Shown piece by piece: positions 18,413-28,134 of a stretch of DNA of 64,000 bases (positions are counted from its first letter, which is position 1; every line of letters begins with the position of its first letter). The notes below the pieces were generated by a model. That model was not told the origin of the DNA. It saw only the letters and a list, made by a program, of their open reading frames with translations, and ran no database searches. A program made the position numbers and the translations under genes. Source of the DNA: Epithemia pelagica (taxonomy: Eukaryota > Protista > Bacillariophyta); contig OX337235.1 of assembly GCA_946965045.2 (NCBI GenBank), forward strand, positions 1,178,001 through 1,242,000. Direction: 5' to 3'.

Positions 18413-18494
18413 GAGGATGGGTGTGGTCGCAAAGGCGACTGGATGATTCAGCGGACGCACTCGTCAGGGAGTATTTGAAGCGTCCGCCAGCAAG

Positions 18495-19017
18495 TCGCAC
18501 AAGGTAGATGACCGTGACTGATCGTACGATGAGTCACGATCAATACCTAGTGGTTTCATCTGGCTGTGACGTCATAATATACAAACACCTAGCACATGTA
18601 GATCGTAGTTTAGACAATGGGGAGAAAGGGAATACGATAGGAGGCGCTTTCAATGGCCTTGGACATGAGCTAGACATCATCCATGAACATGTGCGATATC
18701 TTGGGACGATTGAATGCGATCTAGATGTCAGATGCACACGAACCAGCAATGCTGCGTGTAGATTTCTACGTACCTAGTACAAATGGATGGAAAAGGGGGA
18801 ACAACAACAACGAGCACTAACATAGACGATAACACTCACAATTCTAAAAAGCATCATCATCACATCTCTTTGTGTCCTACCTACTCTTCTAGTAGTTGTT
18901 GGCCTTTTCCTTGACCCGTGGGGGATTGGCTACGTGGTTGGTGCCTTGAATTGTCTAACGCTTTGTTGTATCTTTGATTGTTGTGTCGTAACGACCGGAG
19001 TCCTTCATCTTTTGTCA
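18495..19017 (+). repeat. 5' LTR of copia 2 (523 bp)
   Basis: Identical by eye to 25691-25965 plus 27584-27831 (275 + 248 bp). Confidence 0.95.
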
Positions 19018-19031
19018 GATTAACAGTCTCA
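19018..19031 (+). other. Primer-binding site of copia 2 (GATTAACAGTCTCA)
   Basis: Abuts the LTR end ...TGTCA and is identical to the PBS of copia 1. Confidence 0.85.
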
Positions 19032-23000: not shown

Positions 23001-25717
23001 TTGCTTCGCCGGCGCTTAACGGTCGCACCCCCATTGAGCGCCTGACGGGCTCCACTCCTGATGTTAGTTTCTTACTTGCTCATTATTTCTGGGAACCAAT
23101 TTATTTTTCTTATGATCCTGATCGATCTTCTTACCCTTCTACTGGTAATGAATCTAAAGGTCGTTGGGTAGGTTTTGGTACTGGGGTTGGGGATCCATTA
23201 ACATGGAAGATCCTTACTGATGAGACCTCTACGATTTTGTTTCGATCTACTATTCGTAGTGCTACCTCTTCTTTACCTAACCGACGTCTAGATCCAGAAA
23301 AAGGGGAGATAGTTCATGTCAGAGGTCGTCATGAAGATAGTTCTTCTGGATCTACACCTTCTATGCCTACTATAGATCCACATGATCTACTTGGCCGTAA
23401 ATTTCTTGGCCCTAAACTGGAAACTGGGGAGCGTTTCCGTGGGTTAGTTGTTGCTATGGTCCAAGATCAAGCTTATCGTGACCGAAAACGTTTTGAAGAC
23501 CTCAGTTTTGAAGTGGAATATGATGAAGGTCGCCTTCGTGAGATTGTCACTTACAACGAACTTCTCAATCATCTAGATCATGATCCTGACGACGTTGTTT
23601 TCTCTGAGCAAGAGTATCGCATGCGGCAAATCACTGCTCATCAAGGTCCTCTCAAACCTACTGATGCTCATTACAAGGGATCTAGCTACAACGTTCTTGT
23701 CGAATGGGAAAATGGGGAGACTAGCTATGAGCCTCTTTCTTTTATAGCTAGTGATGATCCTTTGCTATGCGCTATCTATGCCAAGAATAATGGACTACTC
23801 GACTTAGATGGCTGGAAGCACCTAGCTAAATACGTCAAGACTGAAAAACGACTCATCAAGACACTCCGTCGACATTTGCAGCAAGCCAAGAAAAAGATGA
23901 TCCGGCGTAACTCTCGCGCGCAAATCAAGTACCGTTTTGGCGTGCAAGTCCCACGGGATTATGATGAAGCTATCCTGCTAGATGTTCAGAACAAGAATAA
24001 CTTATGGTCAAAAGCAACTGAACTCGAGCTAGATCAAGTCATTCATCAATATAAGACATTCCTAGTTCGGGATAAGGCTATTTTTCAAAATGGGAAGCTT
24101 ATGAATGCTCCTGAAGGATACCAACGGTTGAGAGTTCACCTAGTTTTCGATGTCAAACATGATGGACGTCGAAAAGCTAGACTTGTAGCTGATGGGCATT
24201 TGACTATACGAGACCCGTCTATGTCAAGCTACTCAGGAGTGGTATCAATACGTGGCCTACGTCTAGTTATCTTCCTCAGTGAACTGAACAAGCTGGAGAT
24301 CTGGGCAGCTGACATTGGAAATGCTTACCTAGAAGCACAAACAAAGGAGAAGCTATTCATCATAGCTGGTCCTGAATTTGGAGATTTGGAAGGAAAAATC
24401 TTGATTTTTGATAAGGCACTTTACGGGCTTGTGACCAGTGGAGCACGATGGCATGATAAACTCTACGACGTTTTACAAGAAATGGGATTTAAACCATGCA
24501 AGATTGAACCTGACATCTGGTTTAAGCTAAACGAAGAGCACGGTGTCTACGAGTACATAGCAGTTTACGTAGACGACCTAGCAATTGCTGCAAAGAATCC
24601 GAAAGAAATTTGTGATACTTTCACTGAAAAATTTAAATTCAAACTCAAAGGTGTGGGCCCAATAGCATATCACCTAGGGTGTACATACAAGAGAGAACCA
24701 GATGGAACATTGGTTGGGGACCCCAGACGATACGTTGAGAAGATACTCGAAGGATACGAAATCTTATTCGGGAACAAACCGAAAAAGTACAAGACTCCAT
24801 TAGACCGGCAAGATCATCCTGAACTAGATGATAGCGAGCTATGTGAAGAAAAGGACATTGCCATCTATCAATCCATTATAGGGCAACTGCAATGGGTGGT
24901 GACTATAGGTCGTTTTGACATCTTCACTTCCGTCATGACATTGGCTAGATTCCGTGCCGCTCCACGAATTGGCCATTTGGAACGTGCAAAACGAGTTGTT
25001 GGATACCTAGCAGGCATGTATCATGGAGCAATCCGTTTTAGACTACATGAACCAGACTACTCCAATCTGCCAGACCAAAACTATGACTGGTTCCGCGTTT
25101 ACGATGGAGCACGAGAGGAAGTTCCAAAAGATGCACCGGAACCTAAGGGTCTACCCGTTGTTACAACTACCTTTGTCGATGCTAACCTAAAGCACGACAT
25201 GATTACGGGGAGATCAGCATCTGGGATTCTACACCTAGTCAATGGAACTCCCATGGACTGGTACTCCAAGCGACAGGCAACGGTTGAGACTGCAACCTTT
25301 GGCTCTGAATTTGTCTCTGCACGGATTGCATGTGATCAAATCATGGAACTACGCATTTTTCTTCGTTACCTAGGAGTACCACTACGAGATTCTAGCTACC
25401 TATTCGGAGATAACAAGTCAGTGGTAACCAATAGTACGGTACCACATTCAATCCTTAGCAAACGCCATCATTTTCTGAGCTACAACCGTGTACGTGAGTG
25501 TATGGCATCGAAGGCTATCAAGTTTTACTGGAAGGATGGCAAGACCAATCCCGCTGACGTGTTGACTAAAAATTGGGATTTTGTCACGGGATGGCCACTC
25601 CTTAAACCTCTGCTATTCTGGCGAGGTGATGTTAGTGCTTTGAACGATAAGATCAATGAACCAAAACAAGACAGACAGACGAAAGGGGAGTCGCACAAGG
25701 TAGATGACCGTGACTGA
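20090..25717 (+). CDS. Gag-Pol polyprotein of copia 2 (1875 aa)
   Basis: Protease LIDRGANGG; integrase VATDTVF / ISDRA / FAENRY; RT RKARLVADGH, LYGLVTSG, YVDDL; RNase H FVDANL, FGSEF, FGDN, NPADVL. All expected catalytic acidic residues are present. Confidence 0.96.
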   Translation: MTEPTENAVDLSQDPVFQHIFTTILNQPPDRLTDFQDWFTHHKFLDFSEFLELYVFEPETLADDLEFKTKRQPKTQKLHPTFAKQIRAFLLWANHLHSLAQRFFGADDWLALTREDYGRFRIGTYFPTSSQSRALNVPSTPGTPSLGTPGGKSTMSNSSQSQQDLTTFRKGIKRDSTAYEVLKEEKNYDPFMRSFRATALAQGLGNVLDPSFVVDSTDPAASALYREQQIFLYSVLVRCLQTDKGRAIIRAHTTDMDATAVLDELRTHHTDSELSRKEIMRLTAYLTNIRLDSAWRGTTSQFLLHFNEQLRLLDSLCDSSQKLPDFSRTTFLMQAVDGNEDLRRVKIFDDFLKSQSGTHAKMSYDDYYRVLTNAAFQFDQHLASKNGSKRRAYASQQCDHDIFDSDHSSSHDDFIQEDLVSIFQANRTRNRIDTRTQRIFLPKDIWDATSDEVKEMLKAHNKRILANSPNSKPRQTNLHEVSESSADENPTATDNTEEACQEAAVATESDPSPDQLLTMLHEQTDYPESDIQRVLSANKAKSKGVSFSINATYRFSKANLNPTFQLIDRGANGGLAGSDLKIIHKTGRKINIIGIDNHEVTGLDIVTAAGLYSTQLGTIVGIFHEYAYLGKGRSIHSPPQMEYFKTLVDDKSVLVGGRQRIETLDGYALPLIFKGGLVYLDSLGIPTDNDLATYPHVVFTSPDEWNPDVMDHSHSSNPDTHSDWMDLVNPDPIDRDFSATGDYVHRVNLVSQILTLHQQTNLAGAVDFQHSRYHQQSLKSEDFEALRPYFAWASADSIANTFKVSTRYVGFSPHDYLKKHFRTRNPVLNIGRRREGVATDTVFADTPAIDNGSKAAQIFVGRDTLVCDVYGVKSDAQFVNTLEDNIRLRGAMDVLISDRAQALVSKKVQDILRSLFISQYTSEPHHQHQNFAENRYSTLKRWTNLILNTSGCPPSCWLLALDYASTVLNHLASPALNGRTPIERLTGSTPDVSFLLAHYFWEPIYFSYDPDRSSYPSTGNESKGRWVGFGTGVGDPLTWKILTDETSTILFRSTIRSATSSLPNRRLDPEKGEIVHVRGRHEDSSSGSTPSMPTIDPHDLLGRKFLGPKLETGERFRGLVVAMVQDQAYRDRKRFEDLSFEVEYDEGRLREIVTYNELLNHLDHDPDDVVFSEQEYRMRQITAHQGPLKPTDAHYKGSSYNVLVEWENGETSYEPLSFIASDDPLLCAIYAKNNGLLDLDGWKHLAKYVKTEKRLIKTLRRHLQQAKKKMIRRNSRAQIKYRFGVQVPRDYDEAILLDVQNKNNLWSKATELELDQVIHQYKTFLVRDKAIFQNGKLMNAPEGYQRLRVHLVFDVKHDGRRKARLVADGHLTIRDPSMSSYSGVVSIRGLRLVIFLSELNKLEIWAADIGNAYLEAQTKEKLFIIAGPEFGDLEGKILIFDKALYGLVTSGARWHDKLYDVLQEMGFKPCKIEPDIWFKLNEEHGVYEYIAVYVDDLAIAAKNPKEICDTFTEKFKFKLKGVGPIAYHLGCTYKREPDGTLVGDPRRYVEKILEGYEILFGNKPKKYKTPLDRQDHPELDDSELCEEKDIAIYQSIIGQLQWVVTIGRFDIFTSVMTLARFRAAPRIGHLERAKRVVGYLAGMYHGAIRFRLHEPDYSNLPDQNYDWFRVYDGAREEVPKDAPEPKGLPVVTTTFVDANLKHDMITGRSASGILHLVNGTPMDWYSKRQATVETATFGSEFVSARIACDQIMELRIFLRYLGVPLRDSSYLFGDNKSVVTNSTVPHSILSKRHHFLSYNRVRECMASKAIKFYWKDGKTNPADVLTKNWDFVTGWPLLKPLLFWRGDVSALNDKINEPKQDRQTKGESHKVDDRD

Positions 25718-25965
25718 TCGTACGATGAGTCACGATCAATACCTAGTGGTTTCATCTGGCTGTGACGTCATAATATACAAACACCTAGCACATGTAGATC
25801 GTAGTTTAGACAATGGGGAGAAAGGGAATACGATAGGAGGCGCTTTCAATGGCCTTGGACATGAGCTAGACATCATCCATGAACATGTGCGATATCTTGG
25901 GACGATTGAATGCGATCTAGATGTCAGATGCACACGAACCAGCAATGCTGCGTGTAGATTTCTAC
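25691..25965 (+). repeat. 3' LTR of copia 2, first segment
   Basis: Identical to 18495-18769. Confidence 0.95.
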
Positions 25966-27579
25966 CATTGGTCCTCGGAGGGGATGTAGGATCCCTGCAC
26001 GTACCTATTTACTATAGCCCAATTTTTACTGTAGCTCATTTTTTTAGTTAGTGTATGTAAGTAAGATTGTATCAAAGCGATGGGCCAAAAACCAAAAAGT
26101 GAGCGGAAGAAACGAAACGCCACATCGAATAGAGAGTACGAAGCAGCCCATACCAAACCAACAGCAACCAAACCATCCCCAAGAGACAGCGACCAAAGGG
26201 AAGCAACAACCAACCAGAACACAAGAGACAACACAGCAACCAAAGGGAAGCAACAACCACAACCAGCAACCACAGAAACAGCAACCAAAATGAAACAACA
26301 ACCAACCCAAAGCACAGAGACAGATTTTGCAACCGAAGGCCAAAGAGTCACAACAAGCAGAAGCACAGGGACAACAAGCAGAAGATGCAATAACCAACCA
26401 AAAAGCACAAGAGACAACACAGCAAACAAAGAGAGACCACAATAGGTAGACCACAATAGGTGAAACAACAACCACAGGGAAACAACAACCAACCAAAAGC
26501 CCACGAGGCAACACAGCAACCCATCCAACACAACAATCAATGAGACAGCAATCCAGGCAAAAGGAACCAACCACCAAAGAGAGACAGCCATCAAAGCAAG
26601 ACAGGAACCAACCAAAAGAACAACACCGAAGCACCAAAACAAAACAACAACCAACCAAAGCAAGGAAACAGCACCCAACCAATCACAACAACCAAATGAA
26701 GAGAGAGAGAGAGACATGGTGAGACATGCTTGAGAGGAAAGAAACAATCAAACATGAAGGAGAACTCAAAGAATGACACATACCTTGAAGGAAAGGAAGA
26801 CAAGGAAGACGGACCAAAAGAGAAGCCACGACTCTCATCCAGGGTGCTAAAACAGATAGAGAACAACAATGTAAGTAAACAGATTGAAGAGAAGACAAGA
26901 GAAGAAACAAATAGGACTTACTTTGATTGATGGGTTGATGTTTTGTTGCTTCCATGGTCATTCCAACATTCCACACTAAATTTGATCGAACGAGGAAAAA
27001 TGAGACCGAGAGAGGAATGAGAAACCTGCCACAGTACAGTGTGGCCCGTAGGCCACACGTAGAAGCAGTACATAACAAATGCGACCAGGGAATGCTCGCG
27101 CGCTAGAGGAAGATTTGAATTCAGACGTGCGTGACACATGACCCGGTCACAAGTCATAAGCAATGACTGACGGTCGGTTGGGGTAGACACGATCAGTCTA
27201 ATTAGCAACCATCTTCTTAAGTAACTCTGCCTAAGTGATTAGGAAAGTGCCTAAGTATCAGAATCTTACGGCTAAGTAGGTCTTTTTTATCGGATTGTTG
27301 TCGGCATGTGGAATGTCTAAGTACTACGATTACTTAGTCCCCTCCTCGGACACAACGGAAGCGCACGACATCTGCTCCTCGTCGTGATTCTCGTCGGGGG
27401 CACTTCTCGGGGGCCTAACTCCTCGGCGGGCAATAGGTCCTCGTCGTGTACTGCCCCAAATCCGCTTATAGCGGATTTGTCGGGGCAGTACACTCCTCGG
27501 ACCTATTGCCCTTCTCGGAGTTAGGCACCCTCGTCGTGCCTCCCTCCTCGTCTCACTCCTCGGAGCAGATGTAGAACTA
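25966..27579. mobile_element. Unclassified 1614-bp insertion: non-coding, A/C-rich core, structured terminus
   Basis: Absent from the otherwise identical 5' LTR and flanked by a CTAC duplication (25962-25965 and 27580-27583). 17/20 direct repeats near both ends, no TIRs, no credible protein. Confidence 0.85.
27368..27572 (-). other. 205-nt rod-like hairpin with periodic purine internal loops (minus strand)
   Basis: Stems of 11, 4, 8, 3+10, 13, 12 and 9 bp read directly from the sequence. Loops read GAGGA/GACGA-type on the minus strand. Confidence 0.9.
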
Positions 27580-27583
27580 CTAC

Positions 27584-27831
27584 GTACCTAGTACAAATGG
27601 ATGGAAAAGGGGGAACAACAACAACGAGCACTAACATAGACGATAACACTCACAATTCTAAAAAGCATCATCATCACATCTCTTTGTGTCCTACCTACTC
27701 TTCTAGTAGTTGTTGGCCTTTTCCTTGACCCGTGGGGGATTGGCTACGTGGTTGGTGCCTTGAATTGTCTAACGCTTTGTTGTATCTTTGATTGTTGTGT
27801 CGTAACGACCGGAGTCCTTCATCTTTTGTCA
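27584..27831 (+). repeat. 3' LTR of copia 2, second segment
   Basis: Identical to 18770-19017, followed by TSD GCAAG. Confidence 0.95.
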
Positions 27832-28134
27832 GCAAGCGTCTCTGACTTCGAATAAACGTCATACTTAGTATGTCGCTGTCGCTCCGCGTTTCAGATTGCA
27901 GATTTCTATGAAAAAAAATATGTCTCACATAATATGTTCTTTCGCCATCGTCTGATATGGCACCTTGACTCAACATCCCGTCAGTAAGTTATCCCTATCG
28001 CGCAACTACACTTCAGACATCAGATCCCCTTACTGCGCTGTTACATGACCATTGCTTGTCGAAAGACTTCCACTTCCTTCTCACAAATCGATCGACAAGA
28101 AGATCATCAAGCCAAAAACCCTGACAACATTACA

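What the first reader, a model, noticed from the sequence alone, without database searches (positions are those of the whole stretch)
25966..27579. Unclassified, very recent 1.6-kb non-coding mobile element inside an LTR
Seen: the two LTRs of copia 2 are identical except for this 1614-bp insert, so it arrived after a young retrotransposition. It is flanked by a CTAC duplication, though CTACTAC at the right end also allows a 3-bp TAC reading. It has no TIRs, no LTR ends, no poly(A) and no Helitron TC...CTRR. It does carry 17/20 direct repeats just inside both ends (TCCTCGGAGGGGATGTAGGA 25972-25991; TCCTCGGAGCAGATGTAGAA 27557-27576). The right end (TGTAGAACTACTAC) mimics the palindromic target (TGTAGATTTCTAC). 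Known: short near-terminal direct repeats are described for Replitron HUH transposons, and target-like ends for tyrosine-recombinase elements. Inference: a non-autonomous member of an uncharacterised family that moves through a single-stranded intermediate.
Basis: partly seen in the sequence, partly recalled or inferred. Interest (0 to 1): 0.85.

Follow-up and report, generated by a model that had tools for sequence, protein, structure and literature searches.

The report
Passenger copy of a diatom Crypton transposon
The 1.6-kb insert is a real, recently moved, non-coding passenger of a 5-kb diatom jumping gene that encodes a tyrosine recombinase (a Crypton-type DNA transposon), and it gives an unusually clean view of where this poorly understood kind of transposon cuts and joins.

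Summary
The 17/20 near-terminal direct repeat is at the stated coordinates.

The element is not unclassifiable. It has three full-length siblings in the genome (99.3, 98.8 and 75% identical). It shares its first 102 and last about 250 bases with elements of about 5 kb. Their only conserved gene has a tyrosine-recombinase (YR) fold, the R/R/H/Y catalytic residues and dN/dS 0.08. They have no reverse transcriptase, HUH Rep or helicase. So the insert is a non-autonomous Crypton-like element.

CTAC is not a target-site duplication. In 33-36 independent insertions the left copy is almost always CTAC and the right copy is C-N-A-C. The target reads W-G-T-N6-C-N-A-C. This places the exchange at C|NAC.

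The right end carries a 205-nt rod palindrome that is kept across families by compensatory changes.

"Uncharacterised family" and "single-stranded intermediate" are not shown. This scan had already called the 376-nt and 5-kb relatives on other pieces of this genome Crypton-type; I retested that here.

The parts
18758..18769 (+). Unoccupied sister target in the intact 5' LTR: GT-AGATTT-CTAC (G at -8, T at -7, core CTAC at 18766-18769)
   Evidence: it fits the target consensus
25689..27832 (+). 3' LTR of the copia element, interrupted by the insert (LTR halves 25689-25965 and 27580-27832)
   Evidence: 526/526 identity to LTR1 outside the insert
25962..25965 (+). Left junction core CTAC: the C is inferred to come from the target and TAC to be the first bases of the element
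   Evidence: 33 of 36 independent left junctions read CTAC; the exceptions vary only at the first base
25966..27579 (+). With the crossover at C|TAC the mobile unit is 25963-27580 (1618 nt)
25962..26063 (+). 5' terminal module, 85-88% identical to the first 102 nt of the 5-kb recombinase-encoding elements
25972..25991 (+). Left subterminal 20-nt motif TCCTCGGAGGGGATGTAGGA, a direct repeat of the right one; probable recombinase-binding site (inferred)
   Evidence: the motif is kept at both ends in three families
26064..27331 (+). Interior of about 1.27 kb, A/C-rich, unrelated to the autonomous elements and without a credible gene
27332..27580 (+). 3' terminal module, 94-95% identical to the last 242-250 nt of the 5-kb elements
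27368..27572 (+). 205-nt imperfect rod palindrome. Its internal loops are CTCSTCG-type motifs in the same orientation on both arms
   Evidence: DNA fold -68.1 (+) and -71.2 (-) kcal/mol, z -12.5 and -12.0; 9 pairs with changes on both sides across families
27557..27576 (+). Right subterminal 20-nt motif TCCTCGGAGCAGATGTAGAA, which overlaps the foot of the rod
27580..27583 (+). Right junction core CTAC: the C is inferred to be the last base of the element and TAC to be target. In other copies this reads CGAC, CAAC or CCAC
   Evidence: +1 C 33/33; +2 T18 G8 A5 C2; +3 A 32/33; +4 C 32/33

Best explanation
The insert is a non-autonomous member of a diatom Crypton-like family of DNA transposons moved by a tyrosine recombinase. 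It keeps only the two end modules of a 5-kb autonomous element and carries unrelated, non-coding DNA between them. The recombinase is supplied in trans by the 5-kb copies. I infer that it binds the 20-nt motif near each end and excises the element, most likely as a circle whose joint reads ...GTAGAACTAC|TACCATTGG.... It then recombines that joint with a genomic site of the form W-G-T-N6-C|N-A-C. The exchange falls between the C and the next base, so the left junction always shows the element's TAC and the right junction shows the target's NAC. No target bases are duplicated. In this window the target happened to be CTAC, which is why it looks like a 4-bp duplication. Shown: multi-copy status, shared ends, the recombinase fold and residues, purifying selection, the target consensus and the crossover position. 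Inferred: trans-mobilisation, the circle, the binding role of the motifs and any role of the rod palindrome.
For: Copies and ends: the genome holds 4 full-length copies, many elements share the 3' module, and 15 share the 5' module. Five 5-kb elements share both ends with the insert. Protein: the gene lies on the minus strand in two exons, which I searched separately. Exon B has 116 relatives. Near-invariant R165, R187, H188 and Y197 have the spacing seen in Cre and lambda Int. A profile search of PDB puts XerA, a XerC-like protein, an integrase and IntI4 among its 6 hits, all aligned on box II. The AlphaFold model has pLDDT 87. By structure, the best 28 of 48,161 chains all belong to the tyrosine-recombinase/topoisomerase IB superfamily: Cre Z 7.2, Xer 7.0, IntI4 6.6, QRICH1 (DUF3504) 6.2. 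Foldseek's top hit is QRICH1. ESM Atlas neighbours are eukaryotic Phage_integrase/DUF3504 clusters. Arg I, in an RxxE motif at the end of exon A, is invariant in 11/11 sequences. The two exons are collinear with a transcript-derived protein of the diatom Entomoneis paludosa. dN/dS is 0.08 between element lineages. No other ORF has a Pfam domain. Junctions. A third family carries CGAC instead of CTAC yet sits next to CCAC/CAAC targets and keeps GT at -8/-7. Non-autonomous Cryptons and short boundary direct repeats are already described (PMC3212892).
Against: Pfam does not recognise the protein. Each sequence match to a solved recombinase is weak on its own (E 0.05-0.8). The structural Z scores are below 8, and only the C-terminal two thirds of the catalytic domain was modelled. 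The histidine of HxxR is replaced by arginine in this family. No circle, excision footprint or transposition event was observed. The circle-joint sequence is absent from the assembly, and the public reads were uninformative. A canonical tyrosine recombinase makes cuts 6-8 bp apart and should leave mixed junctions, which are not seen. The element's GT-to-core spacing is one base longer than the target's. The nearest sibling differs by 11 bases although the LTRs show 0 differences, so the donor copy is not identified.
Confidence: 0.85

Rival explanations
1. It is still a tyrosine-recombinase element, but it integrates by an atypical one-strand pathway. One strand of the element end, organised by the folded or extruded 205-nt rod, is exchanged at C|NAC, and the junction is resolved by replication, as in integron attC x attI or CTX-phage integration.
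For: The crossover behaves as a single point. In the 15 of 33 sites where the target base at +2 is not T, the left junction never carries the target base. Under symmetric heteroduplex segregation this has a chance of about 0.5^15 (my calculation). The 4 nt before the core are inherited within subfamilies, not swapped. No homology is needed at +2, and a sister family uses CGAC. The rod is strongly stable as single-stranded DNA (z -12), is kept by compensatory changes, and recurs in a family only 40% identical in protein.
Against: The crossover lies about 6 nt outside the foot of the rod, not inside a folded site as in attC or CTX. Palindrome arms can co-vary through templated repair without any selection for folding. 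Biased mismatch repair could also hide heteroduplex. There is no direct evidence for single-stranded DNA.
Confidence: 0.2
2. One reading: a non-autonomous HUH/Rep (Replitron-, Helitron- or IS200/IS605-like) element that moves as single-stranded DNA.
For: Short direct repeats lie near both ends, a large hairpin lies near one end, insertion is orientation-specific next to a fixed tetranucleotide, and there is no duplication. These traits resemble Rep transposons as described in PMC10288648.
Against: The longer copies with the same ends encode a tyrosine-recombinase fold and nothing else recognisable. Both ends are precise, unlike Replitron's fuzzy right ends and variable duplications. There is no Helitron TC...CTRR terminus. 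Replitrons were not detected in diatoms.
Confidence: 0.03
3. The recombinase gene is a passenger or a resolvase, and the ends are cut by some other, unlinked transposase. Tec1 and Tec2 carry both a DDE transposase and a recombinase in this way.
For: No experiment links the recombinase to these ends, and the crossover pattern is not textbook tyrosine-recombinase behaviour.
Against: The recombinase is the only conserved gene. It is under strong purifying selection between element lineages (dN/dS 0.08), and it co-occurs with the same end architecture in three or four diverged families. Insertions show neither TIRs nor a fixed-length duplication, both of which a DDE enzyme would be expected to leave.
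Confidence: 0.07
4. A derivative of a DIRS/Ngaro-type retrotransposon, which carries a recombinase plus reverse transcriptase.
For: It shares the enzyme class, and DIRS-type elements also lack target duplications.
Against: The 5-kb elements have no reverse transcriptase or RNase H ORF. They have no inverted terminal repeats with an internal complementary region and no split direct repeats.
Confidence: 0.03

Closest known systems
CryptonS / Crypton DNA transposons (Goodwin 2003; Kojima and Jurka 2011, PMC3212892)
   Same: A eukaryotic DNA element whose only enzyme is a tyrosine recombinase. It has no TIRs or LTRs and has short (4-6 bp) direct repeats at the boundaries that serve as the recombination substrate. 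It occurs in stramenopiles, including a diatom. Non-autonomous derivatives that keep only the two ends are known (CryptonI-1N1_RPro).
   Different: The core is CTAC/CNAC, not the TATGG typical of CryptonS. The protein is too diverged for Pfam. The first His of HxxR is replaced by Arg. The paper reports no conserved non-coding sequence or terminal structure, whereas this family has a 20-nt motif at both ends, a conserved 205-nt rod palindrome and a defined 12-bp target consensus. Placement within CryptonS could not be tested because no Repbase sequences were available.
Integron attC x attI and CTX-phage/XerCD integration
   Same: A tyrosine recombinase, a long imperfect palindrome on the mobile partner, a crossover at one fixed phosphodiester (G|TT there, C|NAC here) and tolerance of non-homology next to it.
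   Different: In those systems the crossover lies inside the folded hairpin; here it lies about 6 nt outside. Those systems are bacterial. Single-strandedness is not shown here.
Conjugative transposons Tn916/Tn1549 and CTnDOT
   Same: Excision to a circle and insertion by a tyrosine recombinase into loosely defined targets that resemble the element's joint, with limited homology needed.
   Different: Those elements carry variable coupling sequences from the previous site. Here the bases before the core are inherited within subfamilies.
Replitrons (PMC10288648)
   Same: Short direct repeats at or near both ends, a hairpin near the right end, and orientation-specific insertion.
   Different: Replitrons encode an HUH Rep, have fuzzy right ends and variable duplications, and were not found in diatoms. 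None of this applies here.

Membership tests
Crypton (tyrosine-recombinase DNA transposon) | The autonomous element encodes a tyrosine recombinase with the catalytic R...HxxR...Y set | tested here: met
   Arg I (RxxE) is invariant in 11/11. R165, H188 and Y197 are at least 90% conserved with Cre/lambda spacing. Box II aligns to Xer and IntI4. The fold matches Cre, Xer, Int and QRICH1. One variant: the first His of HxxR is Arg.
Crypton (tyrosine-recombinase DNA transposon) | No reverse transcriptase, RNase H or methyltransferase (this separates Cryptons from DIRS, Ngaro and PAT) | tested here: met
   Nine ORFs of 100 aa or more in a 5-kb copy (L032), including every one of 200 aa or more, have no Pfam domain, though the two RT-bearing retroelement classes were not searched for by a dedicated profile. 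The element is only 5.0-5.3 kb.
Crypton (tyrosine-recombinase DNA transposon) | No TIRs or LTRs; short direct repeats at the two boundaries, one from the element and one from the target | tested here: met
   CTAC on the left and CNAC on the right in 33-36 independent copies; no terminal inverted or long direct repeats.
Crypton (tyrosine-recombinase DNA transposon) | Non-autonomous member: both termini shared with an autonomous element, no recombinase gene of its own | tested here: met
   5' 102 nt at 85-88% and 3' 242-250 nt at 94-95% identity; the interior is unrelated and non-coding.
Crypton (tyrosine-recombinase DNA transposon) | Excision as an extrachromosomal circle | not testable with these tools
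   Only assembled contigs of public runs were available. The joint sequence is absent from the assembly, which says nothing about free circles.
CryptonS subgroup | 5-6-bp terminal repeats, mostly TATGG; recombinase clusters with oomycete and Phaeodactylum CryptonS | tested here: inconclusive
   The termini are CTAC/CGAC, not TATGG. Phylogeny was not tested for lack of reference sequences. Named relatives come from the diatoms Entomoneis and Cylindrotheca.
Replitron | Rep HUH endonuclease in autonomous copies; fuzzy right end; variable target duplication | tested here: not met
   No Rep ORF; the ends are precise to the base in more than 30 copies; none were found in diatoms according to PMC10288648.
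Helitron | 5' TC and 3' CTRR termini, insertion between A and T, Rep/helicase protein | tested here: not met
   The ends are (C)TAC...GTAGAACTA(C), the target is WGT-N6-CNAC, and there is no Rep/helicase gene.
DIRS/Ngaro retrotransposons | RT plus RNase H plus recombinase; inverted terminal repeats with an internal complementary region, or split direct repeats | tested here: not met
   No RT or RNase H and no such repeat architecture.

The most novel reading that the evidence does not exclude
This diatom Crypton lineage does not use the textbook two-step double-strand pathway. Its conserved 205-nt rod palindrome, with identical CTCSTCG-type loops on both arms, organises or exposes one strand of the element end. 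The recombinase then performs a single strand exchange at C|NAC that replication resolves. That would be a eukaryotic counterpart of integron attC or CTX-phage integration, and the first Crypton with a defined att-like site and structured end.
Probability: 0.2. Interest if true: 0.8.

Novelty: new variant of a known kind. Interest (0 to 1): 0.55.

Why it matters
Cryptons are the least understood class of eukaryotic DNA transposon. Kojima and Jurka (2011; PMC3212892) state that no transposition, transcription or regulation study existed. They also found no conserved non-coding sequence and ends that are hard to define.

This genome provides several things that make the mechanism testable:
- recently active elements: this insert sits in an LTR pair with zero differences;
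- potentially intact recombinase genes in at least four 5-kb copies;
- small natural substrates of 1.6 kb and 376 nt;
- an exact empty site next to a filled site;
- a 12-bp target consensus, a crossover mapped to one phosphodiester, and a conserved structured end.

A sequence-defined eukaryotic tyrosine-recombinase integration system with a short target could also interest people building genome-insertion tools for diatoms. For annotation, it shows that an "unclassified" repeat with a Pfam-invisible partner can be placed by checking whether longer copies share both ends.

Tried and rejected
- **Assembly chimera:** rejected. There are four full-length copies and more than 40 relatives with base-precise ends.
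- **True 4-bp target duplication:** rejected. The left and right tetranucleotides differ in 15 of 33 copies.
- **Coupling sequences picked up from earlier sites (Tn916 style):** rejected. The last four bases follow subfamily markers.
- **Pfam on all large ORFs of the 5-kb element and the insert:** nothing found.
- **Single-sequence and 5-sequence profile searches of PDB:** nothing found.
- **First structure prediction with 5 sequences:** failed, pLDDT 34. The 61-sequence alignment was needed.
- **Word-indexed homology searches:** found only close relatives without names.
- **Reads:** only assembled contigs of four runs of the same organism were available. The 1618-base "skip" they show is simply the intact LTR form present elsewhere in the genome. 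No contig bridges a junction, and no circle or empty allele can be inferred.
- **Head-to-tail joint pattern in the assembly:** 0 matches.
- **Inverted-repeat finder on the distant family L071:** found nothing. A folding scan then found its rod. Its ends could not be fixed from a single copy.
- **Spliced protein:** the two exons were never joined. Each was searched by reference, so no full-length protein was folded or searched.

Full report
**1. The observation**

The window holds a copia-type element. Its 5' LTR is 18493-19018 and its 3' LTR is 25689-27832. The repeat finder matches the two LTRs at 100% in two blocks that overlap by four bases, CTAC. A script finds 0 differences in 526 aligned positions. 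The intact 5' LTR shows the unoccupied site, GTGTAGATTTCTACGTACC. The 17/20 direct repeat is at the stated coordinates. I found no TIRs, LTR ends, poly(A) or Helitron termini. None of the three insert ORFs I tested (261, 131 and 121 aa) has a Pfam domain.

**2. The insert belongs to a multi-copy family with coding partners**

A search of the whole 60.5-Mb assembly found three more full-length copies:

| Copy | Differences from the insert | Identity |
|---|---|---|
| C16 | 11 substitutions | 99.3% |
| C11 | 20 substitutions | 98.8% |
| C17 | – | 75% |

Dozens of other elements share only the last 190-250 bases.

I fetched 10 kb upstream of five of those 3' ends. They belong to elements of 5.0-5.3 kb that also begin with CTACCATTGGTCCTCGGGAGGGATGTAGGATCC, the same 5' end as the insert. 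The insert shares 102 nt at the 5' end (85-88%) and 242-250 nt at the 3' end (94-95%) with them. The 1.27 kb between is unrelated.

A second non-coding family of 376 nt has about 30 copies at 93-100% identity. It has the same end architecture with slightly different sequence.

A third coding family of 4.5 kb also shares this architecture. It was found in assembly ERZ21939226. One of its flanks is identical to a flank in this genome (C1), so that assembly appears to be the same or a near-identical genome.

**3. The protein**

On the minus strand the 5-kb elements carry one conserved gene. It has a GT...AG intron between ...ISFRCLE and IHLARITDF.... Each exon was searched by reference.

Sequence evidence:
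- Pfam and direct PDB sequence searches found nothing.
- An exhaustive profile search with exon B found 116 relatives.
- In a 61-sequence alignment the near-invariant residues are D65, G136, R165, R187, H188 and Y197.
- The motif RSxRRxGI, then RH 22 residues later, then Y a further 9 residues on, has the spacing of box II in Cre (R292, W315, Y324) and lambda Int (R311, H333, Y342). That comparison rests on my own knowledge.
- The profile picks out XerA, a XerC-like protein, an integrase and IntI4 among its six PDB hits. All are aligned on these residues.

Structure evidence:
- With the deeper alignment AlphaFold gives pLDDT 87.
- Foldseek's best hit is QRICH1, whose DUF3504 domain derives from Crypton recombinases according to PMC3212892.
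- An all-against-all structural search puts 28 members of the tyrosine-recombinase/topoisomerase IB superfamily in the top 28 of 48,161 chains. Examples are Cre Z 7.2, Xer 7.0, IntI4 6.6 and QRICH1 6.2.
- ESM Atlas neighbours are eukaryotic Phage_integrase/DUF3504 clusters.

Further support:
- Arg I lies in an RxxE motif at the end of exon A and is invariant in 11/11 sequences.
- The two exons are collinear with a transcript-derived protein of the diatom Entomoneis paludosa. A Cylindrotheca protein is another named relative.
- Between two element lineages exon B has dN 0.12, dS 1.5 and dN/dS 0.08.
- No other ORF has a recognisable domain, so there is no RT, Rep or helicase.

**4. Junctions**

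I collected 36 independent left junctions and 33 independent right junctions.

- **Left junction.** It reads CTAC in 33/36. The three exceptions (TTAC, ATAC, GTAC) differ only at the first base.
- **Right junction.** After the element's ...GTAGA-NNTA comes C (33/33), then any base (T18, G8, A5, C2), then A (32/33), then C (32/33).
- **Upstream of the left core.** G at -8 (29/36), T at -7 (32/36) and A or T at -9 (30/36).

The target is therefore W-G-T-N6-C-N-A-C, an outer GT...AC palindrome. Five sites read GTAG at -8, echoing the element's own TGTAGA end.

The left junction always carries the element's T at +2, while the right junction carries the target's base. The exchange therefore lies between +1 and +2. 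CTAC is not a duplication; this LTR simply happened to offer CTAC.

The four bases before the core (ACTA, ATTA, TATA, TCTA) follow subfamily markers and are inherited, not swapped. The third family carries CGAC as its own core, sits beside CCAC and CAAC targets, and keeps GT at -8/-7.

**5. The structured end**

Bases 27368-27572 form a rod palindrome. Folded as single-stranded DNA it gives -68 to -71 kcal/mol, with z about -12 on either strand. Its internal loops are CTCSTCG-type motifs that run in the same direction on both arms.

Across three families, 9 of 55 pairs change on both sides and stay paired. A family whose protein is only 40% identical has a rod of the same design with different stem sequence. 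The crossover lies about 6 nt beyond the foot of the rod.

**6. Mechanism**

The best-supported reading is a Crypton-like cut, circle and join mechanism carried out in trans by the recombinase of the 5-kb copies. The parts and the crossover are shown. The circle, the binding role of the 20-nt motifs and the role of the rod are inferred.

One feature is not textbook. A canonical enzyme cutting 6-8 bp apart should leave heteroduplex. Half of the insertions at non-T targets should then show the target base on the left. None of 15 does. This leaves room, at about 20%, for a one-strand exchange resolved by replication.

**7. What could not be shown**

- Public runs of this organism were available only as assembled contigs. 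They confirm that the sequences exist but bridge no junction and show no circle.
- The predicted joint is absent from the assembly.
- The donor copy is not identified. The nearest sibling differs by 11 bases.

**8. Comparison and novelty**

Kojima and Jurka (PMC3212892) describe Cryptons in a diatom and in oomycetes. They report 4-6-bp boundary repeats, non-autonomous derivatives, no terminal structure and no conserved non-coding sequence.

This family fits the class on every defining feature I could test. It adds a different core, a defined target, a mapped crossover, paired subterminal motifs and a conserved rod. I rate it a new variant of a known kind.

Earlier follow-ups of this scan on other pieces of the same genome reached the same class for the 376-nt and 5-kb relatives. 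I re-derived that here independently from the insert outward.

Noticed in passing
G000 contig C9, about 2964487-2969478, 3006354-3011615 and 3047534-3054995 (loci L009, L010, L011, L017, L035): Three 5-kb recombinase elements lie about 42 kb apart and have the same 3' flank, so a segment of about 42 kb on this contig seems to be triplicated. The third copy is interrupted by roughly 2.1 kb inside its rod palindrome.
   Followed up: partly
L063 (G000 C5:1770956-1771296) and L066/L067 (C4:280984, C3:184306): One 376-nt element lacks its first 33 bases yet is still preceded by CTAC. Two others stop inside the rod palindrome after about 250 bases. These may be aberrant recombination products or later deletions.
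   Followed up: no
L071:3690-3870 (assembly ERZ21939226, contig ctg1329l): A recombinase gene only about 40% identical in protein has its own rod palindrome upstream. The rod has CGAGGAG/CGACGAG/CGAGAAG loops at regular spacing but quite different stems. The ends of this element could not be set from one copy.
   Followed up: partly
L032:5806-6861 (minus strand) and the equivalent region of the other 5-kb copies: Downstream of the recombinase exons runs a long open frame of low complexity rich in Asn, Pro and His (repeats of NNNNGRPPYE). A Pro-rich tail also follows the recombinase-homologous region of the Entomoneis protein (P0025), as glimpsed. I did not examine whether it is a C-terminal tail of the recombinase.
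   Followed up: no
window 25977-25994: A small palindrome, GGGAT-GTAGG-ATCCC, would present the GTAG of the left subterminal motif in a 5-nt loop. It is present in the 5-kb copies as well.
   Followed up: no
window 27194 (run X3, table 7): One assembled contig leaves the insert at 27194 and continues with sequence that matches the 5' region of the 75%-identical C17 copy. It is probably a variant copy or a graph artefact.
   Followed up: no
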